Of a stretch of 64,000 bases of DNA, positions 879 through 58,069 are shown piece after piece. Under the pieces are notes generated by a model. It was given only the letters and a program-made list of their open reading frames with translations, ran no database searches and was not told the origin of the DNA. Both the position numbers and the translations under genes were made by a program. Within the stretch, counting starts at the first letter, position 1, and the number at the start of each line of letters is the position of its first letter. Location of the stretch: IMG/VR virus record IMGVR_UViG_3300042391_001376, positions 140,905 through 204,904 of that record, one strand, 5' to 3'.

Positions 879-883
879 TTAAT

Positions 884-5174: not shown

Positions 5175-5176
5175 AA

Positions 5177-5593: not shown

Positions 5594-5611
5594 ATTTCCT
5601 AACTTTTTTAC

Positions 5612-6016: not shown

Positions 6017-6017
6017 G

Positions 6018-6224: not shown

Positions 6225-6268
6225 AGAAACTCCTAATCTAATACTTAATATTAATAGTAATGACTCAG

Positions 6269-7684: not shown

Positions 7685-7783
7685 TTTGTGCTCCGTTCAT
7701 GTTTTAAAAATTAAGATTCTATATATTAATATAATATATTATTATATATATACATATTATTTATAACATATATGTATATAGTA

Positions 7784-7804
7784 AGGGGGTAGGGGGTAGG
7801 GGGT
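7784..7804 (+). repeat. three tandem AGGGGGT repeats next to a ~70-bp almost pure A/T tract
   Basis: AGGGGGT x3 at 7784-7804, preceded by a TA-rich run at ~7715-7780. Confidence 0.85.
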
Positions 7805-7842
7805 AAAATCCCAGTCTACTATTTTTTCATCTCTACTTCAAG

Positions 7843-8004
7843 TCACTTGCCAATTTTCTTTATGTTTTCTATTTCAGGCTGTCCTTCATCACAAGGTCCC
7901 GCGTATGCCCAGTACTTAACAAGGTCAGTTACGTTATTAAATCTATTCTTAAGCAAATATACTGCTCTGTAAAAATTGTCATCTAATTCTATTTTGCGTT
8001 GCAT
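7843..8004 (-). CDS. small hypothetical protein (53 aa)
   Basis: manually translated MQRKIELDDNFYRAVYLLKNRF...; below the ORF-track cutoff. Confidence 0.5.
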   Translation of the reverse strand: MQRKIELDDNFYRAVYLLKNRFNNVTDLVKYWAYAGPCDEGQPEIENIKKIGK

Positions 8005-35072: not shown

Positions 35073-35158
35073 GCCCAGGTGGCGGAACCGGTAGACGCAA
35101 GGGGCTTAAACCCCCTCGATTAGAAATGATCGTACGGGTTCGATCCCCGTCTTGGGCA
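35073..35158 (+). tRNA. tRNA-Leu(TAA)
   Basis: GCCCAGG/CTTGGGC, AGGGG-CTTAAAC-CCCCT, long variable arm. Confidence 0.95.
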
Positions 35159-35178
35159 CAAAAGAACAAAGGAACTCT

Positions 35179-36618
35179 ATGCGGAATAAGAGCCACTATC
35201 TAAAACTGTTGTTAACAACAGCATTAATGTTAACAGTTCTTGTTAACTCAAAAACTAATACAGCTAATGCTGGCGATGTTGCACCAGCTGTTTCAACTGT
35301 TAAGTTTTATCGTAAACTGACCAACTATTATTTGCCCAATTTATCATCTGCAGTCCCAAGAATGGGTGCAGATATAGCTTACAATAATAACTTCAGAGGA
35401 CAAGATTCCTTTATAGTTATTCTTGATACTGGCATTGAAGCTGTCCACTCATTCTTTGGTGGCAGAGTAGCACTTGAAGCTTGCTTCGCCGTCAAATGCC
35501 CCAATGGTCAAATATCTATGGTTGGTTCTGGTGCAGCAGCCCCAATTCATTGGCACGGTACCCATGTTGCAGGCATTGCCGCTGGACTTAACTCATCTAT
35601 TAGAGGTATAGCACCAAGCGCAAAGATCATTGCAGTAAATGTTTTTGCTGCAGATGGTTCTGCTTCAGACTCTGATCTTATTCGCGCATTACAATGGGTT
35701 GATTCTATATCTGATCAATATAATATTGCGGCTGTCAACATGTCTCTTGGTACACCAGGAACATTTAAATCTTCATGCAACTCTTATATACCAGATTTAA
35801 CTTCAATTATTTCTACATTGAAGTCTAAAAATATTGCTACTGTAGTTTCAGCCGGCAACGAAGGCCAGCGTGGAATGAGTTCCCCAGCATGCATTACAGA
35901 CACTGTCAGTGTTGCCGCAACTTACACTGCTGGAGACGGCAGTGACAGAGTTACTAGCTTTAGCAACGTTAATGAATTAACTGATTTATCAGCTCCTGGA
36001 TACAACATAGTGTCTTCCAAACTTATGGGTGCATATGGTGCATCTTCAGGAACATCTATGTCAGCACCTATGGTTGCTGGCGCATTTGCAGTATACCGTT
36101 CTAAGTTTGGCGTACAATCAGTAGATAAAGTAGTATCTGACTTTCAATCTACTGGAATCAACGCAGTAGATGATTACACCAAAATTGTTACAAAAAGAAT
36201 AGATTTTAGATCCCTGTTTTCAACACCTGGATCTACACCCCCACCACCCACCACAACTATTCCCTCACCAACTACAACAACTCCATCACCTACTACCACC
36301 GTACTTGATGAAGATGATGAATCAGAAGACTATTTAAATATTCCTTACATTATAACTTTGAAAAAGTTTGCAACTAGACTATCTTATATTCGATTAGACT
36401 TTACATACAGATATACAAATATACCTGTGTCTAATTTTATTTTAAGGTGCAGATATGCAGACAATAAAATTGTTGATAAAGTTATTAGCAATAGAAACAG
36501 AACAACTAATTCTTACTTTATATCAATATCTTCATTAAATATTCGCTCATGTAGAATGGCCGCAGTATCAACAGATGGTACTGTCGGTCAATTCTCCAAA
36601 TACATATTGGTGAAATAA
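35179..36618 (+). CDS. secreted S8 (subtilisin-like) serine protease
   Basis: LDTG, HGTHVAG, SAGN, GTSMSAP; signal peptide; P/T linker; start moved downstream of the tRNA. Confidence 0.95.
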   Translation: MRNKSHYLKLLLTTALMLTVLVNSKTNTANAGDVAPAVSTVKFYRKLTNYYLPNLSSAVPRMGADIAYNNNFRGQDSFIVILDTGIEAVHSFFGGRVALEACFAVKCPNGQISMVGSGAAAPIHWHGTHVAGIAAGLNSSIRGIAPSAKIIAVNVFAADGSASDSDLIRALQWVDSISDQYNIAAVNMSLGTPGTFKSSCNSYIPDLTSIISTLKSKNIATVVSAGNEGQRGMSSPACITDTVSVAATYTAGDGSDRVTSFSNVNELTDLSAPGYNIVSSKLMGAYGASSGTSMSAPMVAGAFAVYRSKFGVQSVDKVVSDFQSTGINAVDDYTKIVTKRIDFRSLFSTPGSTPPPPTTTIPSPTTTTPSPTTTVLDEDDESEDYLNIPYIITLKKFATRLSYIRLDFTYRYTNIPVSNFILRCRYADNKIVDKVISNRNRTTNSYFISISSLNIRSCRMAAVSTDGTVGQFSKYILVK

Positions 36619-42312: not shown

Positions 42313-42645
42313 ATGTTAATAGAACGAAAGCCCTGGATGCAGGAATCTTCTTGTAATGAAGAAGATACAATTGTATTTTTCCCTAACAGATATACTGAAG
42401 CTACAGTGGCTAAGCCATTTTCTCTATGCGACACATGTTTAGTTAAAGCCGACTGTCTTTACGAGGCAATGATTACTGATTCTGTTGGCATATGGGGCGG
42501 AACAACCGAATACCAACGACTCATGCTTTTATCTAAATTATTTAATGATAACTCAAAAAATGTTAACATGAAAGCAATTATTAAGATAATAGAAAACAAC
42601 TACTACTCAATACCAATTTCATCTAGATATGAACAAAAATATTAA
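42313..42645 (+). CDS. whiB: WhiB-family transcription factor
   Basis: W...SSC...FFP...CDTCLVKADC...GIWGG. Confidence 0.9.
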   Translation: MLIERKPWMQESSCNEEDTIVFFPNRYTEATVAKPFSLCDTCLVKADCLYEAMITDSVGIWGGTTEYQRLMLLSKLFNDNSKNVNMKAIIKIIENNYYSIPISSRYEQKY

Positions 42646-42686: not shown

Positions 42687-43430
42687 ATGACAAACGAAGC
42701 TTTCTCCAACGATGATGACCTGTTTTCTTACGACCCTTCGCAAGAACCAGTAATTGATAAATCAGATTTTTCTGCTAGTGCCTCAGGCAAAGTTAATTCT
42801 GACATATTAGAAGACATATCTAAACGGATAGATGGCGCAAAGGATGATGATATCCTTGGATCTTTTAGTATGAAAATAAGATTTGCTCAATCCTTCATTG
42901 AATCATATACTTATTTCATTCAAACTAGTAACACCTTTTTCCATAGAGCTGTACACCAAACTTTAGATCAATTAACTTCTGGTAGATTCTCTATGATATA
43001 CATGTTTAATCATTTAGAGCATAACTTGTTGCGCCGGCTAAATGTTAAGTATATCTTAGAGAATACTTTTTTAGATACCGGTGAACCATCTTCTGAAGAT
43101 TTTCAAACATTTCTTAAAAGAGTTGGTTTAGATTTAGATGAAACTTTTATTGGTTGCTATATTCAAAGTAATATAGATATCAACAATCATGTCATTAATA
43201 ACGAACGGTCTTTGTACATGGAACTAGCAGAACGCTTAGACTTAAACCCACACCACGTCATTGCTAATTCAAATCCAACACTAGACGATTTGGTAGGGTC
43301 TCTTCCAACTTCTGTAGACAGATATCATCAAGAAATGTATGAAGCCATGTTCGCTTCATTAGCTGATTCTGGGTATACAGATAAACTTTCTGATCTTTAT
43401 TCTGACAAAGTTAGGCTATCTCAAATATGA
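42687..43430 (+). CDS. hypothetical protein
   Basis: 247-aa ORF. Confidence 0.7.
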   Translation: MTNEAFSNDDDLFSYDPSQEPVIDKSDFSASASGKVNSDILEDISKRIDGAKDDDILGSFSMKIRFAQSFIESYTYFIQTSNTFFHRAVHQTLDQLTSGRFSMIYMFNHLEHNLLRRLNVKYILENTFLDTGEPSSEDFQTFLKRVGLDLDETFIGCYIQSNIDINNHVINNERSLYMELAERLDLNPHHVIANSNPTLDDLVGSLPTSVDRYHQEMYEAMFASLADSGYTDKLSDLYSDKVRLSQI

Positions 43431-43885
43431 GCAAAAAGCATTTAAAACAATTTTTACTGTCCGTGGCTACAGCTTCTGCTGTTGCTGCAATAAACTATAC
43501 TATATTTCATAGTCATTTTGTTTTTGTAGTATTAATGGTTTTAATTGCTCACGAACTTGGTCACTATATAACAGCAAGAATGAATGGCGCTAAAGCAGAT
43601 CTTCCATACTTTATCCCATTTCCAATAATTTCTATTGGCATAACACATATTAAGAATATGAAGTTTCTTTCTAAATCTACTAGAAAGAAAATATTGGCTT
43701 ATGGTCCCATAACTGGATTCATTACAGCTTTTTATTTTTTATTATTATCACTTCTCTTTTCATCACTCCCATCAGCTCCACTTTTATTTATTTGTTTTTC
43801 TGAATTGGTATTTAATTATTTTGGTTCTGATGGTAAAAAATATCGTCAAATAAAAGAACAGGAATTATCTTTATGTATTTCATAA
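43427..43885 (+). CDS. M50/site-2-type intramembrane metalloprotease-like protein
   Basis: HELGH in a TM helix, YGP, GSDG. Confidence 0.78.
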   Translation: MSKKHLKQFLLSVATASAVAAINYTIFHSHFVFVVLMVLIAHELGHYITARMNGAKADLPYFIPFPIISIGITHIKNMKFLSKSTRKKILAYGPITGFITAFYFLLLSLLFSSLPSAPLLFICFSELVFNYFGSDGKKYRQIKEQELSLCIS

Positions 43886-44278
43886 TTGCACCATTGGTGT
43901 TAATAGGTTTAGCTGCAAAGCTAATAAACAATAAAATAGATAAACAAAAACAAAATAATGACTCATTGTTATTTAACAGTGAGCTTTCCAAATTCATGCA
44001 ACAGATAACCAAAGAGGCAGATACCAGTGACACCGACAGAAACAATATACGACAATTCACCAAAAAACCAAAGCGCAATCAATTCTAAAAAAATACAATC
44101 TTATTTAGATGATTGTTGTTTTGATATGCAAGTAAACCCAAACAGCACACTATCTGGAACAGAAGCATATATCATAAAAATGATATCTAAAATTGCTGTT
44201 GGTTCTGCGACTGTGTGGTGGTCGGTTATTGAACTTAGACAATTTATTAAAAATCGCAAATCCTTGTAAGGAGAAATA

Positions 44279-44662
44279 ATGAGCTCAGAAGATTATAAAA
44301 AGTTAGATAAAATTAAAAAATTTAACTTTTCTTTTGATATGGTAACAAAAAGTAAAGCTGAGCTCCAAGAACAACGCGATGCAGTAAAGGAAAGAATAGA
44401 CAAGATCGTTAACCATTTTACGATAGACGATGTACCTATTCTTTCCTACATACTGCATGTAACTACTTCTCGTGTAGAATTAAAGAAGCTAGCTAAAGCT
44501 ATAGACAGACTCGCTGATTTAGCTGATGTCAATACTGCCTTAAGTAATAAGCTTAAAGTTATCGAAGCTGCAGAGTCAGACCCAAATTGGTTTGCTCTAG
44601 CTTTTGGTGACTTTGACCAAGAAATTGATCTTGATCTAGAAAAATTTTTTACCCAAGAATAG
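44279..44662 (+). CDS. hypothetical protein
   Basis: AAGGAG RBS. Confidence 0.65.
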   Translation: MSSEDYKKLDKIKKFNFSFDMVTKSKAELQEQRDAVKERIDKIVNHFTIDDVPILSYILHVTTSRVELKKLAKAIDRLADLADVNTALSNKLKVIEAAESDPNWFALAFGDFDQEIDLDLEKFFTQE

Positions 44663-44680
44663 CCTAAGGAATATAATATC

Positions 44681-46324
44681 ATGGATAAAGTTTCTTACAG
44701 TTTTGTAAAAGAAGACAGCAATCTTATCTTTCGGTCTAAAGTAAATTCATTTAATCTTGACCACGTTACAGATAAAGATATAACTTCATTTTTTACATCT
44801 TTTTCTAATTATGCTTACTTTGATACTGGCTTGCTTCCTGTTGATGGAACTGGCTTATTAGGTATCAGACGCGCAGGAGACCACACTCAAGTTATATACC
44901 AGTATAAGCCTGGTATGTATTATGTTAATTGGGGTGCATATGAAAGAGACTCTGATTACACTAAGTATTATTTAGCTCAACCTTACAGGATTGTTGTTAT
45001 AGACTTTCTTAGCGACAACCTTTTAGGTGCTAGAACATTTTATACTGTAGAGCCGGCTATCCATTCTGCTGTTCAGCTTTACCATGTAAACTTACCAAAC
45101 ATTAATTGCAGAGGTTACCGAGGCAACGGTGTTGGTTGGATTTGCCTATACCATAATGAAGATTGGTCTACTCTTCCATTTAATGAAAGATTGAACAGAG
45201 CTCTTGAGCGTTGTTCTGGCGTTGAAGTATATAACGATGCCAACATGAGTGAAACAGACGGCCCACGCTTTTACCAAGAAAGAGAAATGCCTTTGTATAC
45301 TTGGTCCCCAAGTAAGTGGGAAAAAAAATCTACTGAAGAAGGTTGGGAATGGACTTTAGATTCATCTAATTGGATACCAATTCATGTTGAAAGCAGAGAC
45401 AGCCAAGGGCAACACAAAGAAGGCGGCATTCCCCTTACTTTAGTAGACGCAATTATTGGCAACTATAGTTCATACTATGGAGATACTTATTTGCCAAAAC
45501 CAGTAAACGCTTTGACTCGTTCAGATCTTGAAATTAATCCAATACAAGTTACTGATTGGTTTGTTAAATCTTATAATTCATCTAAAACTACATTTTCTGG
45601 GTTAGACCCATATTCTGCTAGTTCACAAATCAGAGAACAAAATTCTGTAGCTGTACCTAATTTGTTTGATGAAGACGAAGAAGAAATTGATGAAGACAGC
45701 GAAGACTACATAGCCTGTACAATGACAGGTGAAGCTACACCAATCGAAGATTGTTCAAAAGATCATTCTTATTACAATGTTAATACAGGCAAATGCATGA
45801 AGATTTGTTCTGAATGCATAAGCAGTCACGAGATGGTTTACGCAGAAAACACCATGCAGTTTTATGTCCCTGATCATATGGGCGACAGCCTTTATTATGA
45901 TACACACCACGATCAGTATTACGACACTAATGCCATAAAGACTCCTTGGGGCAACTGCTCTAATTGCGGAGGTATTCACATTTCTCCATTCCCAGATAAA
46001 CAATTATTCTTAATTTGGGAAAATCAACAAGAAGAACATTCTTCACTTTGTGCTTTCTGTATAGGTGGAGAAAATGTTGCTGATTGTATTAATTGTGGCG
46101 TCAATGTACCAAGTCACACTTCTCAACATTTTGATCCAACAACAGTAAAGTATGATCCTTCCACACAATACTACCATTGTGCGGTGTGTGTTGAAATCCT
46201 TCAATCAGCCAATTCTGAAGACGTAGCAGAATCAAACCAAGCTGAAGCTAAAAATTTATTACAACTATTGTCAGAACTTACAGATGGTACTTTAATTATA
46301 TCTTCTGATGAAGAACCGTTCTAA
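44681..46324 (+). CDS. prokaryotic E2 family D-like conjugating enzyme fused to CxxC-rich C-terminal region; ends SDEEPF
   Basis: DTGLLP, YLAQPYRIV, LYHVNLPNI...GWICL; adjacent to JAB/E1/Ubl. Confidence 0.72.
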   Translation: MDKVSYSFVKEDSNLIFRSKVNSFNLDHVTDKDITSFFTSFSNYAYFDTGLLPVDGTGLLGIRRAGDHTQVIYQYKPGMYYVNWGAYERDSDYTKYYLAQPYRIVVIDFLSDNLLGARTFYTVEPAIHSAVQLYHVNLPNINCRGYRGNGVGWICLYHNEDWSTLPFNERLNRALERCSGVEVYNDANMSETDGPRFYQEREMPLYTWSPSKWEKKSTEEGWEWTLDSSNWIPIHVESRDSQGQHKEGGIPLTLVDAIIGNYSSYYGDTYLPKPVNALTRSDLEINPIQVTDWFVKSYNSSKTTFSGLDPYSASSQIREQNSVAVPNLFDEDEEEIDEDSEDYIACTMTGEATPIEDCSKDHSYYNVNTGKCMKICSECISSHEMVYAENTMQFYVPDHMGDSLYYDTHHDQYYDTNAIKTPWGNCSNCGGIHISPFPDKQLFLIWENQQEEHSSLCAFCIGGENVADCINCGVNVPSHTSQHFDPTTVKYDPSTQYYHCAVCVEILQSANSEDVAESNQAEAKNLLQLLSELTDGTLIISSDEEPF

Positions 46325-46363: not shown

Positions 46364-48103
46364 ATGTCTCAGCAAGTTGAACAAACTAGCAAGATAACTC
46401 TTGATCAACTCCAATACTTTTGGATGCCATCAGGTTTGCCTTGCTTCGTCGCAGACAGGGATAGTATTTGCGACATAGTAGAAGATTTTGGTTTTAATAT
46501 TTATTATCTTCTAGCTAATAAAAAAACTGTTAAAACCATTCCGAACAACAGTGTTAAAACCACGACCACAACTGGTTATTCAAGTGGCGCTACAACATAC
46601 AACTATCCGAGTGCTCAGCCAACACAAGTTATAACATATAACTCTTCTTTGTTTAAAGTTATAAATAATTTTGTTGGTAGAGTTATAGAGCTTTCCGACG
46701 ATGAACTTCCAGAAACATTCTTTGTAGCTGAAGAAACATGCGAGTACAATATGCCCGCTATGCCGCATGTTCTTGTTGACAAAATGGATCAATTCTTTAG
46801 ACTTGTTTATTCTCAACATGGCACTGAATCAATTGTCTTGTTGACATATGATATGACTAAGACTGGTCCAGAAGGTTGGGGAGTTTTAGTTCCTGAACAG
46901 TCAAACACCGCAGCACATTGTAAGTATGATGCAGACAGCATTGCTCTTATTAAGCCAGAAGATGTTTTGATTGTCGGATCTGTTCATAGTCACCCAGAAA
47001 TGTCGGCTTATGCTTCTGGCACAGACCACGCTGACCAGGCTGATTTTGATGGTCTTCACATTACTTACGGTTGGCAGAAGTCTCAAAACAATGGTGCTAC
47101 TCAGTACCACTTAGAGCTTCAAATGGCAGGAACTGCTTACACCTTAAAGCCTGAAGATGTTTTTGAGGATTATACTTTTCAAAAAGAACCAGACCCAGAC
47201 GTAGTTGAATGGTCAGGTAAAGTAAAAAAAGCGCTCCCCCCTATAGCGGGGGGTACAACACCGCTGGCTTCGGCGCAGGCACAGTATCAACAACAAGCAC
47301 AAAAAATGACCTCATTACAAAATGGGACAACACCTATGGTGGGTGGAACACTTACTAGCAGGAATCTTAGCTGGCAACAAATGGTAGAAGGCTTAGAGCC
47401 TCAAGCTATTGTAATTGTAGAAGTAGATCTTCAACTTTCTAGAACTTCAATTTGTCCAAGTTGTGATTTTGATTTAGATACACCAGATGTAAATGCTGGA
47501 TATTGTTGCTCATGCGACGTTCCAGTTATATCATCTACACATGGTATCATGCAGATTGCTGCTCAGTTTGCTAAATATTGTGAACAAAGAAATTTAGATT
47601 ATCTTAAAACTATTCCTTATCTTTATGGTCAATCTGAAAAAGATGAAGTCTTTTTAATGAAGCTAAATCTTCAAGAAGAACTTACCGATATTCATACATA
47701 TGATTATGTTTATGAAAAAGATTCCGATTATGTTTATCTTCCTGAAGAAGACCCATATGATTCTATCTACGATATAAACGGAACAAGAACTGTCTGTTGC
47801 AATATTCCTATGGAGGATTTTGTATCTGATTGTTCGTGCAATCCAGCTATATTATTTGAAGATTTAACAAATTTTGAAGAACATATTAGGGATACAGAAA
47901 TGTACGCTGAAGGAACTTCATGTTTGGAATGCGTGCATTATTATAATGCTACCTGTCCAGCATTTCGTTCTGCTTTAACTACTTATGTTAAGCAGGGGTT
48001 TACACTAAATCTTGATCAACACAGAAACACGATAATTCCTTGCGAAAACTATCATTCTGTATATAGTTCATTTGAATCAACAGGAGCAAAAAATGGCAAC
48101 TAA
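46364..48103 (+). CDS. JAB/MPN+ metallo-isopeptidase with Cys-rich C-terminal extension
   Basis: TES...VPEQ...GSVHSHP...ASGTD..D (JAMM motif). Confidence 0.88.
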   Translation: MSQQVEQTSKITLDQLQYFWMPSGLPCFVADRDSICDIVEDFGFNIYYLLANKKTVKTIPNNSVKTTTTTGYSSGATTYNYPSAQPTQVITYNSSLFKVINNFVGRVIELSDDELPETFFVAEETCEYNMPAMPHVLVDKMDQFFRLVYSQHGTESIVLLTYDMTKTGPEGWGVLVPEQSNTAAHCKYDADSIALIKPEDVLIVGSVHSHPEMSAYASGTDHADQADFDGLHITYGWQKSQNNGATQYHLELQMAGTAYTLKPEDVFEDYTFQKEPDPDVVEWSGKVKKALPPIAGGTTPLASAQAQYQQQAQKMTSLQNGTTPMVGGTLTSRNLSWQQMVEGLEPQAIVIVEVDLQLSRTSICPSCDFDLDTPDVNAGYCCSCDVPVISSTHGIMQIAAQFAKYCEQRNLDYLKTIPYLYGQSEKDEVFLMKLNLQEELTDIHTYDYVYEKDSDYVYLPEEDPYDSIYDINGTRTVCCNIPMEDFVSDCSCNPAILFEDLTNFEEHIRDTEMYAEGTSCLECVHYYNATCPAFRSALTTYVKQGFTLNLDQHRNTIIPCENYHSVYSSFESTGAKNGN

Positions 48104-48851
48104 AAGATTTGTAGTTATTGGAGCAGGAGGCGTAGGCACTTGGCTTACCGCTGGCCTAGTAAGACTTCTTGAATGGAAGTTTCCTGGTTCTGGTTTAATT
48201 ATAGTAGATGGAGATAACTATGAAGAAAAAAATAAAGAACGTCAAGAGTTCGCTAAAATTGGCAACAAAGCTGTTGTCAAAGCGCACGAACTTACGCCTC
48301 AATTCCAGAAAACAACAATTATACCGGTTCCGAAGTGGGTTGTCAGTGACACCTTCAAAGGAGTCAGTGCAGACGAAGACTCTCCGAAGATTAAAGCGTC
48401 GGATCTCATATCTGAAGGAGATGTTGTTTTTGCAGTTGTCGATAACTTCGCTGCGCGTAAGATTATTTTTGATGCAGCTGCGAGGTTAAACAACGTAGAT
48501 GTATTTACTGGTGGCAATGACGACGCTTTGTTTGGTTCTATATATCATTACCAAAAAAGAAACGGCGTTGCAATAACCGAACATCCTTCAACATTCCATC
48601 CTGAATATGAAAATGCTCCAGATAAAAATCCTGGTGAACTATCATGCCAGGAGAGATCAGAAATAGAAGGTGGTACTCAACTACTAGCCACTAATATGGC
48701 AGTAGCTGCACTAATCCTTGGTCGCGTACAAAAAACAATTGTACTAGACCAAAGCCCCGAAGAAACTGAAATATATTTTGATTTAGGCGTAGGCAAAGCT
48801 GAGCCTTACAATCGGATGGTATCTCATGTTTCTGAATATATTACAGCATAA
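48093..48851 (+). CDS. ThiF/E1-like Ubl-activating adenylyltransferase
   Basis: VVIGAGGVG, DGD...NKERQ, VVDNFAAR, ELSC, Q...TN. Confidence 0.92.
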   Translation: MATKRFVVIGAGGVGTWLTAGLVRLLEWKFPGSGLIIVDGDNYEEKNKERQEFAKIGNKAVVKAHELTPQFQKTTIIPVPKWVVSDTFKGVSADEDSPKIKASDLISEGDVVFAVVDNFAARKIIFDAAARLNNVDVFTGGNDDALFGSIYHYQKRNGVAITEHPSTFHPEYENAPDKNPGELSCQERSEIEGGTQLLATNMAVAALILGRVQKTIVLDQSPEETEIYFDLGVGKAEPYNRMVSHVSEYITA

Positions 48852-48870: not shown

Positions 48871-49122
48871 ATGGAAAACAATATGTCAGGTGCATCAGCA
48901 TCACAAGCAACGGGAATGGCAAATCTTAGATTTGGCGTTTACAATCAACCTACTAACGTAGCTGGTAAATCAGTACAACAGACTCGTGAACAGTTCTCAA
49001 AAATTTGGGGTATCCCAACAGACGCAGTTGCCTACAAGGGCAAAGAGAAACTCGACGAGAACTATGTTATCCAACCAGGTGACAACGTAGAATTCCACCG
49101 TCGTGCTGGAGAAAAGGGCTGA
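48871..49122 (+). CDS. ubiquitin-like (beta-grasp) protein with C-terminal Gly
   Basis: 83 aa ending PGDNVEFHRRAGEKG; directly after E1. Confidence 0.85.
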   Translation: MENNMSGASASQATGMANLRFGVYNQPTNVAGKSVQQTREQFSKIWGIPTDAVAYKGKEKLDENYVIQPGDNVEFHRRAGEKG

Positions 49123-49222: not shown

Positions 49223-50827
49223 ATGTTATTTGATGAAATAAAACTAGGCTATCCAGCTTTATGGCTTAAGACCACTGAATTTTCCAGGGCCGCCGAAAGC
49301 TTAATCTCTTATAATTTTAGAGATTTTTATACTATTGATTTTGAATCTGCTTTTTCTCAGTATGTTGATGGCTCATGGAAGACTGTTCTTATTGAAACAC
49401 TTAATCCAGAAACAAATGAAAGAGTTGCACAGTCAACTTTTGATCCTTCTGTTTCTTTGGATTATCTTATTAATTTAAAGTCTGAAAAACCTGTTACTTT
49501 TATTCTTTCTATTATTGGTAAGCCAGATATGACATTGCCTCCATACATGTCATTTATTGCTTCTTTGAACAGTAAGTACAGAAAGAATTTCTGGGCCGAT
49601 GATGCCAACGCTGGAGCAATACAGATTATATTCTTATCTTCTACTGACGCACCAGAAGAATACGCTCACATGTTTAAGAATGTTGAATTTTCTTATCCAA
49701 ATGCTGAAGAACTATTCACTGTTGTAAACCATATTGACAATGCTTCTGCAGGGCGATTTATAAAACAAGATTCAGTTAAAGATATTGTTCGTTCTGGTTT
49801 AGGTCTTGCTGAAGATCAGTTTGTAGATCTTTGTTTGCGTTCCATTTTGCATCACAACGAAGTTAACCCAAAGTACATATATGATCAAAAGATGGCTAAG
49901 ATTAAACAAGCCGGCATTCTTGAAATCATTAAGCCAACTATATCTTTTGCTAACATTGGTGGCTTAGATAATATTAAAGATATTATTCAAAGAACTAAAC
50001 TTCTTTGGGATAACAGAGAGCAAGCAAAATCTTTTGGCGTTGTACCAATCAGAAGAGTTCTTATGGTGGGCGTTCCAGGCACTGGCAAGTCAGCTATCTG
50101 CCAAGCAACTGCTCATGAACTAGGTCTTGACTTAGCTCGTACTGGAATTAGCCAAGTTATGAATTCTTTTGTTGGCCAGTCAGAGCAGAACATGCGAGCA
50201 GTTTTTCAACAGATTAAGATGATGACTCCACTTTGTGTTTGGATCGACGAGTTTGGTCGAGATCTTTCAGGTGGTGCTTCTTCTGCTTCTGTAGATGCGG
50301 GCACTACTGATCGCGTACACGGCGAATTCTTAACTGGTCTTCAAGAACTTCCAGAAGATACATTTCTTATGTGTGCAGCTAATCAAATAGAGAACCTTCG
50401 TCCCGAGATGCTTCGCGCAGATCGTTTCGATAAAATTGTTTTTGTTGGTCTTCCATCTCTTGAGGAAAGAAAAGATATCTTTAAGATATGCTTGAAGACA
50501 ATTGAAACAGATCACCAATTTGATCTAGATGCCCTAGCTGAAAAAGCAGAATACTTTACTGGCGCAGAAATAACTGCATTGATCAAAGAAGTTAAGTTCT
50601 TTGTAGTTTCATCTGAACTTAGATCTATAAATACTAATGATATTATATCTTATATTCCAAACGTTCGTAATATACTTTGGAACAAGAACAGAGACATGAT
50701 CAAGGGTATGTACCAATACGCCCTTGAACAGTGGGACTGGGCTTCGACACAACAACAAAAAGATGCTAAACTAATATTAGCAGGAAGAAAGTCTAATTCT
50801 GAATCAGAGTTAGCTTGGAAGATTTAA
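49223..50827 (+). CDS. classical-clade AAA ATPase (Ycf46-like)
   Basis: IGGLDNIK, GVPGTGKS, FVGQSE pore loop, WIDE, RADRFD. Confidence 0.92.
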   Translation: MLFDEIKLGYPALWLKTTEFSRAAESLISYNFRDFYTIDFESAFSQYVDGSWKTVLIETLNPETNERVAQSTFDPSVSLDYLINLKSEKPVTFILSIIGKPDMTLPPYMSFIASLNSKYRKNFWADDANAGAIQIIFLSSTDAPEEYAHMFKNVEFSYPNAEELFTVVNHIDNASAGRFIKQDSVKDIVRSGLGLAEDQFVDLCLRSILHHNEVNPKYIYDQKMAKIKQAGILEIIKPTISFANIGGLDNIKDIIQRTKLLWDNREQAKSFGVVPIRRVLMVGVPGTGKSAICQATAHELGLDLARTGISQVMNSFVGQSEQNMRAVFQQIKMMTPLCVWIDEFGRDLSGGASSASVDAGTTDRVHGEFLTGLQELPEDTFLMCAANQIENLRPEMLRADRFDKIVFVGLPSLEERKDIFKICLKTIETDHQFDLDALAEKAEYFTGAEITALIKEVKFFVVSSELRSINTNDIISYIPNVRNILWNKNRDMIKGMYQYALEQWDWASTQQQKDAKLILAGRKSNSESELAWKI

Positions 50828-50829
50828 GG

Positions 50830-51483
50830 ATGCACATGTCAGATCAAATAGATTTTTCTAATATTGAAGAAGTATTAAACAGTATAGAAATGGATAAAGA
50901 TATCCCGTCGAACCATTCTATATCTGACGCTAAGCAGTATGATCAGGACCTTTATAAAAAATGGTTTCGTTCTAAAACTCAGAGCGGTTTTCTTTCAATT
51001 AAACCTTGGTACCAAGGACTTAAATTTAAAATAGATATTGGCAAGACTTCGCCTGATGGCAAGTTACTCGGTAGCACTATGGTTTTTGTTGACGCAATTG
51101 ATTTTGCCGCATATCTTGATTCTATCATTAATGGAACAGCTAAAATTAATTTTCCTACTAATGAAAAGAATGGCAGCCCCACCGATGAATCTTTTGTTTC
51201 TTATGGCGGAGGATTAATAGATTCTAAGCCAATATCTAGAATATTTAAATCTCATTATTGGCAGAATTCAGACAAGTCTTATGACAGCAATGCTTTCACC
51301 TGGAAGTGCGGCCACTTTGCTGCACGCAAAACAGAGAGCGGAGCCTTCATCCCCAACATGTCTTCACCAGTTTCTGTTGATTCTATCAAAGTAACTAGAC
51401 AAGATATTGTTAGTATAGCTTTTATATTGAAGCTATCACTTACATCCCACGTTACAAACAACCCAGATTGGTATAATATCTAA
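50830..51483 (+). CDS. hypothetical protein
   Basis: ORF 50815..51483; start moved to the first ATG. Confidence 0.7.
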   Translation: MHMSDQIDFSNIEEVLNSIEMDKDIPSNHSISDAKQYDQDLYKKWFRSKTQSGFLSIKPWYQGLKFKIDIGKTSPDGKLLGSTMVFVDAIDFAAYLDSIINGTAKINFPTNEKNGSPTDESFVSYGGGLIDSKPISRIFKSHYWQNSDKSYDSNAFTWKCGHFAARKTESGAFIPNMSSPVSVDSIKVTRQDIVSIAFILKLSLTSHVTNNPDWYNI

Positions 51484-51485
51484 TT

Positions 51486-51875
51486 ATGGAAACGCCTATT
51501 GAACAACCAGATGCTAGTTTAATTACTGGTTTACTTTCTACCTTGATGGAAGAAGTTTATAAAAAAATTTATGACGATATTGAAAATCAATTTAAGGATA
51601 TCATCAAGAAGATAGAAGCCTACGAAGATCAGGTCGCTACAATAGTTTATGCTTACGGCGAACAAGCAGTAGTGATGGAAGCTTTAGCAACTCAGTTGAA
51701 CTATGCTTCACCTGAAGCACAAAAAGCTTTTACCGATTCGCTTTCGGAACAAAGAAAAAAGATGGTGGAGACATTAAATGAAGGATCTAAAGGATTTGTG
51801 GCCGATAAAGATCCAGGACTTGCCAGAGCCATTAACAACGTGGTTAAGGAAAAGTTATCTAACACAGATAAATAA
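51486..51875 (+). CDS. helical hypothetical protein
   Basis: 129-aa ORF. Confidence 0.7.
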   Translation: METPIEQPDASLITGLLSTLMEEVYKKIYDDIENQFKDIIKKIEAYEDQVATIVYAYGEQAVVMEALATQLNYASPEAQKAFTDSLSEQRKKMVETLNEGSKGFVADKDPGLARAINNVVKEKLSNTDK

Positions 51876-53642: not shown

Positions 53643-55097
53643 ATGCAACATATCTTTGATTCTAACAGTGACCACACGAGGATCTATACAATTGAATCCT
53701 CCCAACCCTATGCCTATTCAGAGTTTACTGATTGGATTAGACACTACGACTCTGCTAGGTATGTTCCTCCATATTTAGAAAAAGTTGCTTTCCAAGAAAT
53801 GATACAGATTCCAACTCCTAGACTTTACAGCATAAAAAAAGTTCGTTCTTTTGAACGATATAAAGATTTTGTTTACCCAATGGCAGTAAGGTATATTTCC
53901 CAAAATAATACCTATGTTATAGAACGTCCTCCTTTTGAATTAGAAGTTGATTTTCGCATGGGTGGCGCTCATTCAGGGCATCCTAAAATGCCAGCTGTTA
54001 AAATCTGGATTCCTTGGACAGTTATGATATTCAAGGCTAACTCATTTGTTACTGGATCTTTTTCTGATGTTCAGCTTTTTCTAAACAGTGGGCCAATTGA
54101 ATCTCTTGATGACCAACTTATTCCTTGTCTTTACCCTAATTCTTATAGCAATTCTAAGATATGTTTTTCTGCTTCCTTAAGTGACTTTAATGATGTTTTA
54201 GATCTTGAAGAATTTGAAAAAGGAAACATTGGTTATATCTATAATTACATATTTAATAATTATATGATGGGTGGATGGAATGCTGATCTTGAACAGAACT
54301 TAGTGCGCATTCGTTACATGAAGAATAATAAAGATTATCCTATAACAAACTTGTTTCTTAACCCTAGTTCTGATAAAGATTTTTATTCTAAGCTATCTTC
54401 TGTTTTTTCTAAAGAATTTTTTTCTAAAATTAAAAGATTTTATAAAGAAGACTTTGAATTAAATAGGTCTAGAATTAGTAGAGAAAAACTCTACACTAGA
54501 AACTTTGGTATATTTTCTGCTTTTACTTTAGAACAAAAAATTAATTTTATCAAAGAAATTCAAACTTACAATTCTTTAAATAAAATAGATGGTTATAAAC
54601 TTTCAAATTTAATTGAAGAACATGAGCATAGAAGTCATTGTGAAACTTCCGCTTCTGGCGTAAGTTCAATACTTAAACTAACTGATTCTTCTATACAGTA
54701 CACCTATAAAAGTAATGTATTTGATTTTTATTTTGTAAGAAATAGAACTATGATATCTAGACATGAATCAATTTTTCAACAAATTCCTCCTCAACAGCTT
54801 ACTTTAATTCAGCGTCAGCTTATAGACTTTATGGCTAATAGAAGTGAGAATGAACAAATTGCTTTTGTTTACGATTTGACCGATAACACTTATGAAGTAA
54901 TTATTAATTATAATGATAGAGAATTTATTTCTGAAATATATAACACTATACTTGCGCATTGCAAAGAACGCCTTGAAGAAACACAAGAAAGATCTAGATT
55001 TAGAACCTGGTTTAATACAGTAGATGAATCATTTTTGGCAAGATCTATAGACCACCTTTGCAAGCCAAAACAAAATATTGAACAGGATGTTGTATGA
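53643..55097 (+). CDS. prokaryotic E2 family D-like protein (paralog 2)
   Basis: VIERPP, IWIPWTVMIF, LYPNSYSNSKICF, WNADL. Confidence 0.7.
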   Translation: MQHIFDSNSDHTRIYTIESSQPYAYSEFTDWIRHYDSARYVPPYLEKVAFQEMIQIPTPRLYSIKKVRSFERYKDFVYPMAVRYISQNNTYVIERPPFELEVDFRMGGAHSGHPKMPAVKIWIPWTVMIFKANSFVTGSFSDVQLFLNSGPIESLDDQLIPCLYPNSYSNSKICFSASLSDFNDVLDLEEFEKGNIGYIYNYIFNNYMMGGWNADLEQNLVRIRYMKNNKDYPITNLFLNPSSDKDFYSKLSSVFSKEFFSKIKRFYKEDFELNRSRISREKLYTRNFGIFSAFTLEQKINFIKEIQTYNSLNKIDGYKLSNLIEEHEHRSHCETSASGVSSILKLTDSSIQYTYKSNVFDFYFVRNRTMISRHESIFQQIPPQQLTLIQRQLIDFMANRSENEQIAFVYDLTDNTYEVIINYNDREFISEIYNTILAHCKERLEETQERSRFRTWFNTVDESFLARSIDHLCKPKQNIEQDVV

Positions 55098-56272
55098 ACG
55101 ATAAAGGTTACAGACTCACAATAGCAGACTTTAATTTAGAAGATTCTAATTATCGGACACACAATGCCGCCAGTCTTCAGACTCATATAAACATTACTAA
55201 TCCTTTTTTGTTTGATGCCGAGAGAAACAATACCATGCTTCTTGTTGGCGACACCGCAAAAAGAACTATAGGTGAATATTTTTCTGTTTTTAATCCTGTA
55301 AAAACTAACTCTACAGATACAGGTATATTGCCTCCTGGAGTCAAAATAATCGGAACTAATTATTTAGTTTTTGAAAAACCTCCTACATTTAAAAATATAT
55401 TTTATGTTCCTGCATCTAGATCTGATGTCCCAGATGATTGTGAAGATCTTGAACAGGTTTATCGTATTCCAATACCTTGGCAATTATATTTTGTTAAGTT
55501 TAATCCTAACATGTATACCTATGAAGTAAGAATGTTCTTCATGAAGAGCAGCTTATCTTCTACTGACCAAGAGTTATTTCTTCCACCTATTCCAAACTTT
55601 TATACTGACGGTTTACTTTGTTCCCCAACAATGTCAAACATGGAGGATGTTGATAGATATCCTAAGAATCATGCAGGCATAATACAGTCTGCTTATGACT
55701 GGGTTTGGAATTCTGGCACGAACCATGATTTGACAGAAGCTTGTTTACATCTTTCTATGCAGTTGCCGCGGAACCAAACAGTGCTAAAGAACATCCCTGA
55801 GCAAGTATATCAATTAAATTTTCCCACTAGCAATATGTCCATAAACAGATACAGTGCTTCTCCAGGGCAGGTTAAACTTATCCTAAGTGTTTGGGAAAAA
55901 TTTTCTTTATCCGATGTTTGCGAAATGTCATGGCCGAATGTGTCTGGTCCTACTCGCACTTTTGATTATCGAACTGACAGTGTCCGTGACCAGAGCGCTT
56001 ATTACGATAATTTAGCAGATTACCTTTCTGGCCATTATGACCCTGAAGATATAGAAGCAGTTATGGAAAATGACGATTATGACCATAGCGACTATGTCTC
56101 ATATTTATTAGACAATGGTTTAATCAGCATCCCTTCTGGAAGACCGTGGGATATAACTTATACTTATTCTTCTTTACTCCCTCATCTTATTGCAACACTC
56201 GGTGCTGAATTAAATACCGCTGATTGCAGCTTTGAGCGCGAAATTCAAGTAATGACCACAAATAATGTGTGA
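55094..56272 (+). CDS. prokaryotic E2 family D-like protein (paralog 3)
   Basis: DTGILPPG, VFEKPP, YRIPIPWQLYF, PPIPNFYTDGLLC, WNSGTNHDL. Confidence 0.8.
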   Translation: MNDKGYRLTIADFNLEDSNYRTHNAASLQTHINITNPFLFDAERNNTMLLVGDTAKRTIGEYFSVFNPVKTNSTDTGILPPGVKIIGTNYLVFEKPPTFKNIFYVPASRSDVPDDCEDLEQVYRIPIPWQLYFVKFNPNMYTYEVRMFFMKSSLSSTDQELFLPPIPNFYTDGLLCSPTMSNMEDVDRYPKNHAGIIQSAYDWVWNSGTNHDLTEACLHLSMQLPRNQTVLKNIPEQVYQLNFPTSNMSINRYSASPGQVKLILSVWEKFSLSDVCEMSWPNVSGPTRTFDYRTDSVRDQSAYYDNLADYLSGHYDPEDIEAVMENDDYDHSDYVSYLLDNGLISIPSGRPWDITYTYSSLLPHLIATLGAELNTADCSFEREIQVMTTNNV

Positions 56273-56888: not shown

Positions 56889-57320
56889 ATGATAGACCCA
56901 CGCAACTTAATTAACCTTACCGGAGGAGTTGTTACCGATGTTGAATTGGTTAACGACAAAATTGCAAAGTTTCGTTTAGCGGTAGATTACGCTGGATCAG
57001 AAAAAGGTTCAGATAATACATCAGGATATTTTGATGTGGTGTATTACCTCAAAGATGCCAATGGTTTTATTGGCAAGAACGCAACCTTTATCCATGGTCA
57101 AGTAAAGGCTGATAAAATTAAGAAGGGCGCAAAGCTTCAAATTGTTGGACGCTTAGTGCAAGAAAGATGGAAGCAAGACGATCAAAATAAGAATCGTGTT
57201 GTTGTAGTTGCAGAGCATATTTCTTATGCAACAACTGCTGGAGCCCAAGGAGCTAAAACAGCTTCCGCTGGAACATCGTCTGACACAGAAACGCAAAGCT
57301 CTGTACCAGACAGCTTCTAA
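56889..57320 (+). CDS. ssb: single-stranded DNA-binding protein
   Basis: NLINLTG, FRLAVD, KKG...VGRL...W, tail VPDSF. Confidence 0.9.
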   Translation: MIDPRNLINLTGGVVTDVELVNDKIAKFRLAVDYAGSEKGSDNTSGYFDVVYYLKDANGFIGKNATFIHGQVKADKIKKGAKLQIVGRLVQERWKQDDQNKNRVVVVAEHISYATTAGAQGAKTASAGTSSDTETQSSVPDSF

Positions 57321-58069
57321 TGGAAGAATTTAGTGAAGAGTTATTAAACTCTTTAATAGAGGAAGCCCTGAACGAAAAGGGGGAGAGTCTATTAAGACCA
57401 GCTTCTGGGATGTACCTATCCTTTGGAGAAACAGATCTGCTTGCTTTAACACATCAATATATGTCAAAGCATTTGCCGCAGTCTGAACTTAATAGTATTT
57501 TTCAAGAGTTTCGTTCAGAGCTTCTTTCTAGAAAAGTTGCGATAACTCCCAAAGAAGTACATACCGTTACTCGTAACTGCAGGAAATGCGCCATACCATC
57601 CACTGCCGAATTGCCCAAATGGAACGTAGTCAATCCAGATGTAGTAATCGTTGCAGAATCTCCTTCTATAGAACCTGACGCCATAAATTTAATGGTAGAA
57701 TCTATTAAGGAAGCCGGCTTTAAATCAAATGACTTATGCTTAACGTATGTTAATAGATGTCCTAAGTTTGGTAAGTATGATAGCAAAGAAATAATTAATT
57801 GTTCTCCATATTTACATACTGAAATACAATCTTTGAATCCTAAGCTCATAGTTACTATGGGCGGGCTTGCTTGTTCGGTTATATTTGGAACTGAGATTAA
57901 AATAAAAGATTACCGTGGTAGTGTGACATGGCTAGGCTATTGGCCCGTGCTGCCAACATATTCTCCTGGATATGTTTTAAAATCAGGTGCTAATGCAGTG
58001 GAGCAGTTCCGCTCTGATATGATTCAAGCTTATCAATTTATACATCAATCTAAGAAAGAAGTTGTATGA
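57320..58069 (+). CDS. uracil-DNA glycosylase family 4-like protein
   Basis: CRKC, VAESP, NRCP, CSPYL..EI, TYSP. Confidence 0.85.
   Translation: MEEFSEELLNSLIEEALNEKGESLLRPASGMYLSFGETDLLALTHQYMSKHLPQSELNSIFQEFRSELLSRKVAITPKEVHTVTRNCRKCAIPSTAELPKWNVVNPDVVIVAESPSIEPDAINLMVESIKEAGFKSNDLCLTYVNRCPKFGKYDSKEIINCSPYLHTEIQSLNPKLIVTMGGLACSVIFGTEIKIKDYRGSVTWLGYWPVLPTYSPGYVLKSGANAVEQFRSDMIQAYQFIHQSKKEVV

What the first reader, a model, noticed from the sequence alone, without database searches (positions are those of the whole stretch)
53643..56272. E2 expansion: three divergent E2-D paralogs for one E1 and one Ubl
ORFs 44681, 53643 and 55094 share the D/P-G-x-LP ... (E)xPP ... P(W/Y) ... PN(x)n-C ... 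N.(D/A)L pattern but have unrelated extensions. This gives a eukaryote-like one-E1, many-E2 hierarchy. Inference: each E2 extension selects a different substrate, replacing E3 ligases.
Basis: partly seen in the sequence, partly recalled or inferred. Interest (0 to 1): 0.75.

Follow-up and report, generated by a model that had tools for sequence, protein, structure and literature searches.

The report
Jumbo-phage ubiquitin-like system, three E2s
A roughly 205-kb lake-water phage, and every sampled relative, carries one ubiquitin-like protein, one activating enzyme, one deubiquitinase-type peptidase, a Cdc48-type unfoldase and three diverged E2-type conjugating-enzyme paralogs, a multi-E2 arrangement I found no report of in phages.

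Summary
ORFs 53643-55097 and 55094-56272 are clear paralogs (hhalign 96.6%, E 4.7e-10). ORF 44681-46324 is a remote third member (N-terminal profile against the other two: 90%, E 1.7e-6; controls at most 1.2%).

AlphaFold2 models of 55094 and 44681 have an embellished UBC fold. Their best solved-structure matches are mostly or entirely eukaryotic E2s. Both match the same AlphaFold DB clusters, named 'PRTRC system protein B' and 'UBC core domain'. An invariant P-N followed by a conserved Cys marks each family.

The genome (virus record, 204,904 bp, 97% complete) has a single ThiF-type E1, a single JAMM peptidase and one 83-aa protein that ends in an invariant Gly. These lie next to a Cdc48/VAT-like AAA+ ATPase. 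Gene order is conserved in 52 metagenomic phage loci, and all 17 related large genomes searched carry the tandem E2 pair.

Untested: thioester transfer to all three E2s, and the idea that their unrelated extensions choose substrates. One extension is a Cys-rich zinc-finger array weakly resembling LIM/RING/PHD domains, so it may be a fused E3-like part rather than a replacement for one.

No sequence model reaches its cut-off for Prok-E2_D or PRTRC. I file it as a new phage-borne variant of prokaryotic Ubl conjugation operons.

The parts
44681..46324 (+). E2-like protein 1 (547 aa). UBC-like N-terminal domain (about residues 1-300) with invariant H135, N137, P139, N140, C143, C155 and C178. C155 aligns with the Cys of the other two. 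The C-terminal Cys-rich array (about residues 343-512, five CxxC) is absent in a quarter of homologues.
46364..48103 (+). JAB/JAMM metallopeptidase (579 aa) with an intact H-x-H-x7-S-x2-D motif read directly in the translation, plus a Cys-rich C-terminal region. The only JAB match in the genome.
48072..48851 (+). ThiF/UBA5-like E1 adenylating enzyme (probable ATG start at 48093, 252 aa). It has an invariant GxGGxG and an invariant Cys in G-E-L-S-C-Q-E-R. The only ThiF match in the genome.
48871..49122 (+). Ubl candidate (83 aa). The C-terminus E-F-H-R-R-A-G-E-K-G is invariant and ends at Gly in 32 of 35 distinct sequences (window included); three loci carry a 2-residue tail. The beta-grasp fold is not demonstrated.
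49223..50827 (+). AAA+ ATPase (534 aa) of the classical clade. One AAA domain plus lid is closest to the D2 ring of VAT/Cdc48/p97. The N-terminal 230 aa are uncharacterised.
53643..55097 (+). E2-like protein 2 (484 aa). The core is about residues 62-240, with invariant E94, P96, P97, P124, W125, P165, N166 and C174. The C-terminal roughly 240 aa have no detectable relatives outside the family.
55094..56272 (+). E2-like protein 3 (392 aa). Its start overlaps the stop of the previous gene by 4 bases. The core is about residues 70-280, with invariant E94, P96, P97, P128, W129 and N168, and C176 in 43 of 44 homologues. The C-terminal domain is helical.
42687..44662 (+). Three syntenic genes upstream: 42687-43430 of unknown function, 43427-43885 M50-like, and 44279-44662 of unknown function. 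They are conserved next to E2-like 1 in most related loci. Their role in the system is unknown.
50815..51875 (+). Two genes of unknown function (222 aa and 129 aa), conserved directly after the AAA+ gene in nearly all related loci.

Best explanation
This is a phage-encoded ubiquitin-like protein conjugation module, conserved in a clade of roughly 160-270-kb lake-water phages.

Proposed mechanism:
1. The ThiF/UBA5-like E1 adenylates the C-terminal Gly of the 83-aa Ubl and takes it onto its conserved Cys.
2. The Ubl is passed to the conserved Cys of three diverged UBC-fold E2s: C155 in 44681, C174 in 53643 and C176 in 55094.
3. Each E2 delivers the Ubl to targets set by its own non-homologous extension.
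4. The JAMM peptidase trims Ubl precursors and removes conjugates.
5. The adjacent Cdc48/VAT-like AAA+ ATPase acts on tagged proteins.

Shown: the homology, the folds, the conserved residues, the gene content and the synteny.

Inferred: every chemical step, the sharing of one E1 by three E2s, the targets, and whether host or phage proteins are modified.
For: Fold:
- In a search of 48,161 solved chains, the first 27 matches of the 55094 model are E2 enzymes and ranks 28-31 are UEV or E2 proteins. The best is UBE2S, Z 5.4, 128 aligned residues.
- The 44681 model gives mostly E2s (UBE2S Z 4.1).
- Both models match the same AlphaFold DB clusters at probability 1.00. These include 'PRTRC system protein B' (E 2.9e-8 and 4.1e-6) and 'UBC core domain-containing protein' (E 2.4e-6 and 1e-3).
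- ESM Atlas clusters carrying Prok-E2_D align at TM 0.62, 200 residues, rmsd 3.3.

Sequence:
- Prok-E2_D is the only Pfam family that recurs among homologues: 11 of 44 (best E 0.0037) and 6 of 60 (best E 1.1e-4).
- The Cys is kept in 43/44, 30/30 and 32/32 homologues. The preceding Asn is kept in all.

Partners:
- One ThiF E1 (E 6.4e-13; one genome-wide match).
- One JAMM peptidase with an intact motif.
- A Ubl candidate with an invariant terminal Gly, carrying a 2-residue tail in three loci.
- An AAA+ ATPase closest to VAT/Cdc48 (E 2e-53).

Conservation:
- Gene order is the same in 52 IMG/VR loci.
- The tandem E2 pair is in 17 of 17 related genomes.
- A more distant contig keeps JAB-ThiF-small ORF-AAA, then the tandem E2s, then SSB-UDG.

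RNA: short contigs from four lake metatranscriptome libraries match 53654-55270 at 95-100% identity.
Against: - No biochemical evidence exists.
- Z-scores of 4-5 are in the range that the tool itself calls middling.
- Whole-model Foldseek against the PDB found nothing significant.
- No sequence model passes its curated cut-off for any E2 family.
- The 53643 protein was not folded. Its fold is inferred from homology.
- The Ubl's beta-grasp fold is not shown. There are only weak hits of 5 of 31 homologues to Poly_export and one to TGS, both beta-grasp families by my recollection of Burroughs et al. 2007.
- The tandem pair lies 5 kb from the E1, with four unrelated genes between them.
- The E1-Ubl-E2 complex prediction gave no answer.
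- The RNA-library contigs could be DNA carry-over.
Confidence: 0.6

Rival explanations
1. Only the E2 next to the E1 (44681) works with the phage Ubl. The tandem pair (53643, 55094) are UBC-fold proteins with a separate job. They might be decoys or inhibitors that engage host Ubl-based defence enzymes (Bil, type II CBASS Cap2-type systems), or they might be charged by a host E1.
For: - 44681 is directly adjacent to JAB-E1-Ubl and is far more conserved (about 60% identity over 330 aa among relatives) than the tandem pair (30-50%).
- The pair is separated from the E1 by the AAA+ gene and four other genes.
- The complex prediction with 55094 gave no support, although the tool says this is not evidence against binding.
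- Faster divergence fits an arms-race role.
Against: - The pair co-occurs with the E1/Ubl block in every one of 17 genomes, in the same orientation.
- The Cys and the P-N Asn are kept almost without exception, which a pure binding decoy would not need.
- No case was seen of the pair without the E1 block, though the short contig L056 cannot tell.
Confidence: 0.22
2. The E1 and the small protein form a non-conjugating adenylation or sulfur-carrier pair, as in ThiF-ThiS or MoeB-MoaD. This might serve a phage nucleic-acid or cofactor modification. The UBC-like proteins would then be scaffolds.
For: - The best NCBIfam hits of the E1 are ThiF, MoeZ and MoeB, all far below their cut-offs.
- The small protein has no detectable similarity to ubiquitin.
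Against: - A JAMM peptidase with an intact motif and three Cys-bearing UBC-fold proteins are always present.
- No rhodanese or other sulfurtransferase domain showed up in the Pfam scans of the module.
- Three loci have a 2-residue tail after the Gly, which implies proteolytic maturation as in conjugation systems.
- The E1's nearest solved relative by profile is UBA5.
Confidence: 0.08
3. It is simply a copy of a PRTRC-type mobile-element cassette (ParB-related, ThiF-related) carried by a phage, with whatever unknown function PRTRC has on plasmids and integrative elements.
For: - There are weak hits of the JAB protein to PRTRC_A (E 0.001) and of the E1 to PRTRC_ThiF (E 5.5e-6).
- Both E2 models match AlphaFold DB clusters named PRTRC system protein B.
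Against: - The PRTRC_B, PRTRC_C and ParB_N models find nothing in the genome.
- The PRTRC_A and PRTRC_ThiF scores are 5-6 times below their cut-offs.
- By my recollection of the TIGRFAM description, PRTRC has one protein B and no AAA+ ATPase.
Confidence: 0.07

Closest known systems
PRTRC cassettes and Pfam Prok-E2_D operons of plasmids and integrative elements (Iyer, Burroughs and Aravind 2006, PMC1779556, operon classes 6a-6d; NCBIfam TIGR03735-03738)
   Same: - They combine a ThiF-type E1, a JAB peptidase, a small Ubl and a diverged UBC-fold protein with a conserved Cys but without the classical His of H-P-N.
- Both E2 models match 'PRTRC system protein B' clusters.
- Prok-E2_D is the only Pfam family that recurs in homologues.
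   Different: - No PRTRC_B, PRTRC_C or ParB match.
- Every score is below its curated cut-off.
- There are three E2 paralogs instead of one.
- A Cdc48-like AAA+ gene is inside the block.
- The module is carried by a lytic-type jumbo phage genome rather than by a plasmid or ICE.
Bacterial BilABCD (Type I and II) ubiquitination-like defence operons (PMC10557695)
   Same: - Separate Ubl, E1, E2 and JAB-family DUB genes.
- The Ubl has a conserved Gly that in some members is followed by a short tail needing DUB processing. The same is seen here in three loci.
- The E2 is a diverged UBC fold.
   Different: - Bil has one E2 with a C...H (CEHH) signature and a multidomain E1 (PMC10557695). Here the E1 is a minimal 252-aa ThiF-size protein and the E2 signature is P-N...C.
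- Bil is a host defence system, whereas this is in the phage.
- PADLOC models hit neither the E2s, the JAB protein nor the Ubl.
Eukaryotic ubiquitin system: one or two E1s charging many E2s, with Cdc48/p97 acting on conjugates
   Same: - The layout is a single E1 and a single modifier with several UBC-fold paralogs that differ in their appended regions.
- An AAA+ ATPase whose closest solved relatives are VAT/Cdc48/p97 D2 sits beside them.
- A JAMM peptidase is present, as in Rpn11/CSN5.
   Different: - The E2 core is heavily embellished (six-stranded meander, long insertions) and lacks the His of H-P-N in two of the three.
- The E1 has no UFD or separate Cys domain.
- The modifier ends in a single Gly.
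- No proteasome-type peptidase is in the block.
- The resemblance is in layout, not in descent.
Archaeal E1/E2/small-RING operon of Caldiarchaeum subterraneum (PMC3082918, PMC5654768)
   Same: It is a compact operon with a Ubl, an E1, an E2, a JAMM peptidase and a zinc-finger ligase element. The 44681 protein here joins a UBC-like domain to a zinc-finger array.
   Different: - The archaeal proteins are close to the eukaryotic families, and that operon has one E2 with a separate RING protein.
- Here the zinc-finger array is fused to the E2, and its RING nature is unproven: Foldseek gives LIM at E 4.4e-3, while RBR and RING matches are not significant.

Membership tests
UBC/E2 fold superfamily | UBC fold: N-terminal helix, antiparallel beta-meander, active-site loop, C-terminal helices | tested here: met
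   - 55094 model (core pLDDT 85-96): the top 31 of 48,161 solved chains are E2 or UEV proteins, Z up to 5.4, 120-139 aligned residues.
- 44681 model: mostly E2s, Z up to 4.1.
- Foldseek probability 1.00 to a 'UBC core domain' cluster for both.
- 53643 was not folded. It is linked to 55094 by hhalign at 96.6%.
- Z values are modest, and Foldseek against the PDB was not significant.
UBC/E2 fold superfamily | Conserved catalytic Cys in the loop after the meander, preceded by the Asn of the (H)P-N motif | tested here: met
   - P-N then Cys 8 residues later in 53643 (N166, C174) and in 55094 (N168, C176).
- In 44681, N140 then C155 after a 7-residue insertion.
- Conservation of the Cys is 30/30, 43/44 (one Ser) and 32/32.
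- Superposition of this Cys on the E2 catalytic Cys in three dimensions was not checked.
UBC/E2 fold superfamily | Forms a thioester with a Ubl received from an E1 | not testable with these tools
   The complex prediction of the E1 dimer, the Ubl and the 55094 core returned 'no answer'.
Pfam PF14460 Prok-E2_D | Score at or above the gathering cut-off (25 bits) | tested here: not met
   - 55094 scores 13.9 bits, E 0.047. 53643 and 44681 have no hit.
- The best among 104 homologues is E 1.1e-4.
- None of 32 homologues of 44681 has a hit.
Pfam PF14460 Prok-E2_D | Structural similarity to members of the family | tested here: met
   - ESM Atlas clusters in which 19% and 85% of members carry Prok-E2_D align with TM 0.62 and 0.30 normalised by the cluster model (0.44 and 0.38 by the query), rmsd 3.3-3.8 over 176-200 residues.
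- The language-model neighbours of all three proteins include such clusters.
PRTRC system (NCBIfam TIGR03735-03738 plus ParB) | PRTRC protein B, protein C and a ParB-related protein present | tested here: not met
   TIGR03737, TIGR03738 and PF02195 have no match in the genome at permissive thresholds.
PRTRC system (NCBIfam TIGR03735-03738 plus ParB) | PRTRC_A and PRTRC_ThiF at or above their cut-offs | tested here: not met
   18.7 bits against 101.8, and 25.9 bits against 144.75.
ThiF/MoeB/E1 adenylating enzymes (PF00899) | Pfam score above the cut-off, nucleotide-binding glycine motif, conserved Cys | tested here: met
   - 48.8 bits against a cut-off of 28.1.
- 49.6 bits in the six-frame search.
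- GxGGxG, D39, R50, K59, D117 and C185 are invariant in 31 orthologues.
- The equivalence of C185 to ThiF Cys184 rests on my recollection and was not tested.
JAB/JAMM metallopeptidases (PF14464) | H-x-H-x7-S-x2-D metal-binding motif and a family score | tested here: met
   - The motif can be read in the translation as H-S-H-P-E-M-S-A-Y-A-S-G-T-D.
- 26.8 bits against a cut-off of 25 in the six-frame search.
- 23.5 bits in the protein scan.
Ubiquitin-like beta-grasp modifiers | Beta-grasp fold | tested here: inconclusive
   - No Pfam or PDB sequence match.
- Among 31 orthologues there are weak hits to Poly_export (5) and TGS (1), which by recollection are beta-grasp families.
Ubiquitin-like beta-grasp modifiers | Conserved C-terminal Gly exposed or exposable, gene next to an E1 | tested here: met
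   - Gly is invariant and is the last residue in 32 of 35 distinct sequences (window included). Three have a 2-residue tail.
- The gene starts 20 bases after the E1 stop.
BilABCD / type II CBASS (PADLOC models) | Match to defence-system models | tested here: not met
   - Only weak E1 hits to Cap2-type 'E1-E2' models (E 5e-4 and weaker).
- Nothing for the E2s, the JAB protein or the Ubl.
- The PADLOC release is from 2023 and may lack Bil models.

The most novel reading that the evidence does not exclude
A clade of lake-water jumbo phages carries a self-contained protein-tagging and unfolding system: Ubl, E1, JAMM peptidase and a Cdc48-like AAA+ ATPase. Within it the E2 has radiated into three specialised paralogs, one of them fused to an E3-like zinc-finger array. 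The phage would use them to mark distinct sets of host or phage proteins during infection. That would be a viral, independent parallel to the eukaryotic one-E1/many-E2 hierarchy, and the first offensive, phage-side use of ubiquitin-like conjugation.
Probability: 0.35. Interest if true: 0.85.

Novelty: new variant of a known kind. Interest (0 to 1): 0.72.

Why it matters
Prokaryotic Ubl-E1-E2-JAB operons have so far been described as bacterial or mobile-element systems with a single E2. Those that have been tested act in defence against phages (PMC10557695, PMC1779556).

Here the complete enzyme set sits in the phage. It is a conserved core block of a widespread, uncultivated group of 160-270-kb lake phages. 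It has three E2 paralogs and a Cdc48-type unfoldase.

I found no description of it in several places:
- The full-text searches.
- A comparative survey of 224 jumbo phages, which has no text hit for JAB, ThiF or E1-like and mentions ubiquitin only in passing (PMC7824862).
- The GenBank phage collection, which holds no relative.

If active, it would show that phages use ubiquitin-like tagging themselves. It would also give a small, tractable system for asking how E2 diversification sets target choice without separate E3s.

Tried and rejected
- Megablast and tblastn against 50,697 GenBank phage records: no match.
- Sequence profiles of all three families against PDB sequences: nothing meaningful.
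- Foldseek of the whole 55094 model against the PDB: best E 0.11, with Rad6 only at rank 22. The fold was recovered only by VIA-align and by AlphaFold DB clusters.
- PHROGs, NCBIfam and PADLOC: no family for any of the three proteins.
- Pfam on 32 homologues of 44681: only scattered zinc-ribbon or RING hits in single sequences.
- Full-length hhalign of 44681 against the 53643 family: not significant (N-terminal version 6.3%). The link runs through 55094 and the combined core.
- The combined-core profile against the window's own 44681: E 2.1, not significant. The significant hits are to orthologues in other genomes.
- The exhaustive representative search listed only the 150 best of 1,167 hits, all within the family, so the bacterial tail could not be inspected.
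- Complex prediction: no answer.
- Similarity between the Cys-rich tails of 44681 and the JAB protein: none.
- The promoter and terminator scan was uninformative.
- One literature hit for 'PRTRC' turned out to be the promoter name PRtrc.
With two jobs in all, 53643 and the Ubl were not folded.
Full report
**What the window is.** The window is the last 64 kb of a single 204,904-bp contig with 37% G+C and seven tRNA genes. The genome tool identifies it as an IMG/VR virus record that CheckV estimates to be 97% complete. Near-identical DNA is present in many lake-water metagenomes from 2016 to 2024. No record in the GenBank phage collection resembles it at the DNA or protein level.

**The observation.** The three ORFs exist exactly as stated.

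The products of 53643-55097 and 55094-56272 are paralogs:
- BLASTP gives 23% identity over 183 residues, E 1e-5.
- An HMM of the 53643 family finds 55094 at E 1.5e-8 and finds nothing else in the genome.
- Profile-profile comparison gives 96.6% probability, E 4.7e-10, over about 200 columns.

The two families are well populated in metagenomes, with 96 and 63 clusters. An exhaustive search with their combined core found 1,167 representatives at E of 0.001 or lower.

The 44681 protein is a harder case. BLASTP sees nothing, and full-length hhalign gives only 33%. I built an N-terminal-only alignment of 172 family members. It aligns to the combined core at 90% probability, E 1.7e-6, over 113 columns.

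- D-T-G-L-L-P falls on D-T-G-I-L-P-P.
- A-Q-P-Y falls on I-P-I-P-W.
- L-P-N-I-N falls on I-P-N-F-Y.
- G-W-I-C155 falls on G-L-L-C176.

The same query against the E1 alignment, the Ubl alignment and the reversed core gives 0.3-1.2%. Independently, the combined-core profile hits the 44681 orthologue in 8 of 17 related genomes at E 9e-6 to 7e-4, always in the same region.

**Fold.** AlphaFold2 models were made from the family alignments. The 55094 model has mean pLDDT 77.5, with the 80-370 core mostly 85-96. The 44681 model has mean pLDDT 76. Both show one helix, a six-stranded meander, a long loop carrying the conserved Cys, and then helices.

- Whole-model Foldseek against the PDB was not significant.
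- In an alignment of the 55094 model to 48,161 solved chains that does not use Foldseek, the first 27 places went to E2 enzymes and the next four to UEV or E2 proteins. They cover model residues about 70-280, with 101-139 aligned positions and Z up to 5.4. RWD and UEV relatives and the bacterial Bub and CBASS E2 entries rank lower.
- The 44681 model gives the same picture more weakly: UBE2S at Z 4.1, with a few non-E2 chains mixed in.
- The tool warns that such Z values are middling. The weight lies in the uniformity of the list.
- Against AlphaFold DB fold clusters both models hit the same set at Foldseek probability 1.00. These include 'PRTRC system protein B' (E 2.9e-8 and 4.1e-6) and 'UBC core domain-containing protein' (E 2.4e-6 and 1e-3).
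- ESM Atlas clusters whose members carry Pfam Prok-E2_D align at TM 0.62 over 200 residues.
- Prok-E2_D is also the only Pfam family that recurs among homologues, always below its cut-off.

I conclude that all three are diverged, embellished UBC-fold proteins of the prokaryotic E2 type. The 53643 protein was not folded, so its fold rests on homology.

**The partners.**
- The genome has one ThiF-family match, 48072-48851. Its probable ATG start is at 48093. The glycine motif and a Cys in G-E-L-S-C-Q-E-R are invariant in 31 orthologues. The nearest solved relative by profile is UBA5.
- It has one JAB match, 46364-48103. The H-x-H-x7-S-x2-D motif is intact in the translation.
- Twenty bases after the E1 stop lies an 83-codon gene. 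Its product ends in an invariant E-F-H-R-R-A-G-E-K-G. Gly is the last residue in 32 of 35 distinct sequences (window included), and a two-residue tail follows it in the other three.
- That pattern is typical of modifiers that are adenylated at Gly and sometimes need trimming, as reported for BilA (PMC10557695). Its beta-grasp fold is not demonstrated here.
- Next comes an AAA+ ATPase whose closest solved relatives are the D2 rings of VAT, Cdc48 and p97, at E 2e-53.

**Conservation.** Using the 44681 family as bait, 52 IMG/VR loci were fetched from contigs of up to 268 kb. The order is kept almost without exception: WhiB, two or three small genes, 44681-like, JAB, E1, Ubl, AAA+, two small genes, a variable stretch, then the 53643/55094-like genes. 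Every one of 17 related large genomes searched whole has the tandem pair. A more distant contig still has JAB, ThiF, an 84-aa gene and AAA+. These are followed by tandem E2-like genes of only 251 and 278 aa, and then by SSB and UDG, as in the window. The three-E2 set is therefore a stable feature of the clade and not an accident of this genome.

**The extensions.**
- Outside the core the three proteins are unrelated.
- The 44681 tail has five CxxC pairs. It is modelled confidently for residues 380-510. Its structural matches to LIM, RBR, RING, TRAF and PHD zinc fingers are weak.
- Of 120 homologues, 30 lack this tail altogether, and the rest fall into three length classes.
- The 55094 tail is helical.
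- The 53643 tail has no relatives outside its family.

**Mechanism and its limits.** The best-supported reading is a Ubl conjugation cascade. It has one E1, three E2s, a JAMM peptidase for maturation and removal, and an AAA+ unfoldase acting on conjugates. The gene content, the folds and the conserved residues are shown. The chemistry, the sharing of the E1 and the targets are inferred.

A complex prediction of the E1 dimer, the Ubl and the 55094 core gave no answer either way. Four lake metatranscriptome libraries hold short contigs matching 51.2-51.4 kb and 53.65-55.27 kb at 95-100% identity. Two of these contigs span the overlap of the two E2 genes. DNA carry-over cannot be excluded.

The main rival is that only the E1-adjacent E2 is cognate and the faster-evolving tandem pair does something else, such as interfering with host Ubl-based defences. 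Strict co-occurrence and the retained Cys argue against it but do not exclude it.

**Comparison with known systems.**
- The nearest known kinds are the Prok-E2_D/PRTRC cassettes of mobile elements and the other bacterial Ubl-E1-E2-JAB operons first catalogued in 2006 (PMC1779556), of which Bil has been characterised (PMC10557695).
- Membership in PRTRC fails. The protein B, protein C and ParB models find nothing, and the A and ThiF models score far below their cut-offs.
- Membership in Pfam Prok-E2_D fails on score but holds on structure.
- Three things differ from all of them: the carrier is a phage, there are three E2 paralogs, and a Cdc48-like ATPase is embedded in the block.
- The full-text searches found no report of such a phage module. 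A survey of 224 jumbo phages has no text hit for JAB, ThiF or E1-like and mentions ubiquitin only in passing.

**Verdict.** I file it as a new variant of a known kind, with interest 0.72.

Noticed in passing
window 42313-42645 (+): A WhiB-family transcription factor gene (Pfam E 1.3e-12) heads the conserved block and is syntenic in most related loci. By general knowledge WhiB is typical of Actinobacteria and their phages, so the host may be a freshwater actinobacterium.
   Followed up: partly
window 6269-7684 (-), 8262-9248 (+), 35152-36618 (+), 43427-43885 (+): The phage also encodes a ClpX/ClpB-type AAA_2 ATPase, a full RecA (E 7e-116), a subtilase S8 peptidase and a short M50-like peptidase fragment. 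This is an unusually rich set of protein-handling genes beside the Ubl module.
   Followed up: no
L033 and L038 (both in IMGVR_UViG_3300042868_009074, 267,766 bp; G012): This one record carries two complete, diverged copies of the whole module, with six E2-core matches. It may be a chimeric assembly of two related phages or a true duplication.
   Followed up: no
alignment A1, column of C176 of the 55094 protein: One of 44 homologues has Ser in place of the conserved Cys.
   Followed up: no
L040, L041, L052 (Ubl orthologues): The Ubl carries two extra residues (S-L or N-I) after the otherwise terminal Gly, which implies that processing is needed in those phages.
   Followed up: partly
window 25769-61894 (genome 166673-202798): All seven tRNA genes of the genome (Arg, Leu, Asn, Lys, Met, Thr, Gly) lie inside this window, scattered among + strand genes.
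   Followed up: no
window 56889-58069 (+): SSB and a uracil-DNA glycosylase-family gene follow about 600 bases after the tandem E2 pair, beyond two small ORFs. The same E2-E2, small ORFs, SSB, UDG order is kept in the distant contig L055.
   Followed up: partly
window 46364-48103, residues 364-560 of the JAB protein: The JAMM peptidase has its own Cys-rich C-terminal region (Cys at 364, 367, 381, 382, 384 and further on). It is not detectably similar to the Cys-rich tail of the neighbouring E2.
   Followed up: partly
AlphaFold DB hits of both models: The same E2-like domain appears at one end of large bacterial proteins annotated with KOW, Hint/intein and Band 7 domains. This suggests the domain is also used in multidomain 'polyvalent'-type proteins.
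   Followed up: no
window 1-8000: Genes here are on the - strand with strongly negative GC skew. The switch to + strand genes at about 8 kb coincides with the change of sign of the skew.
   Followed up: no
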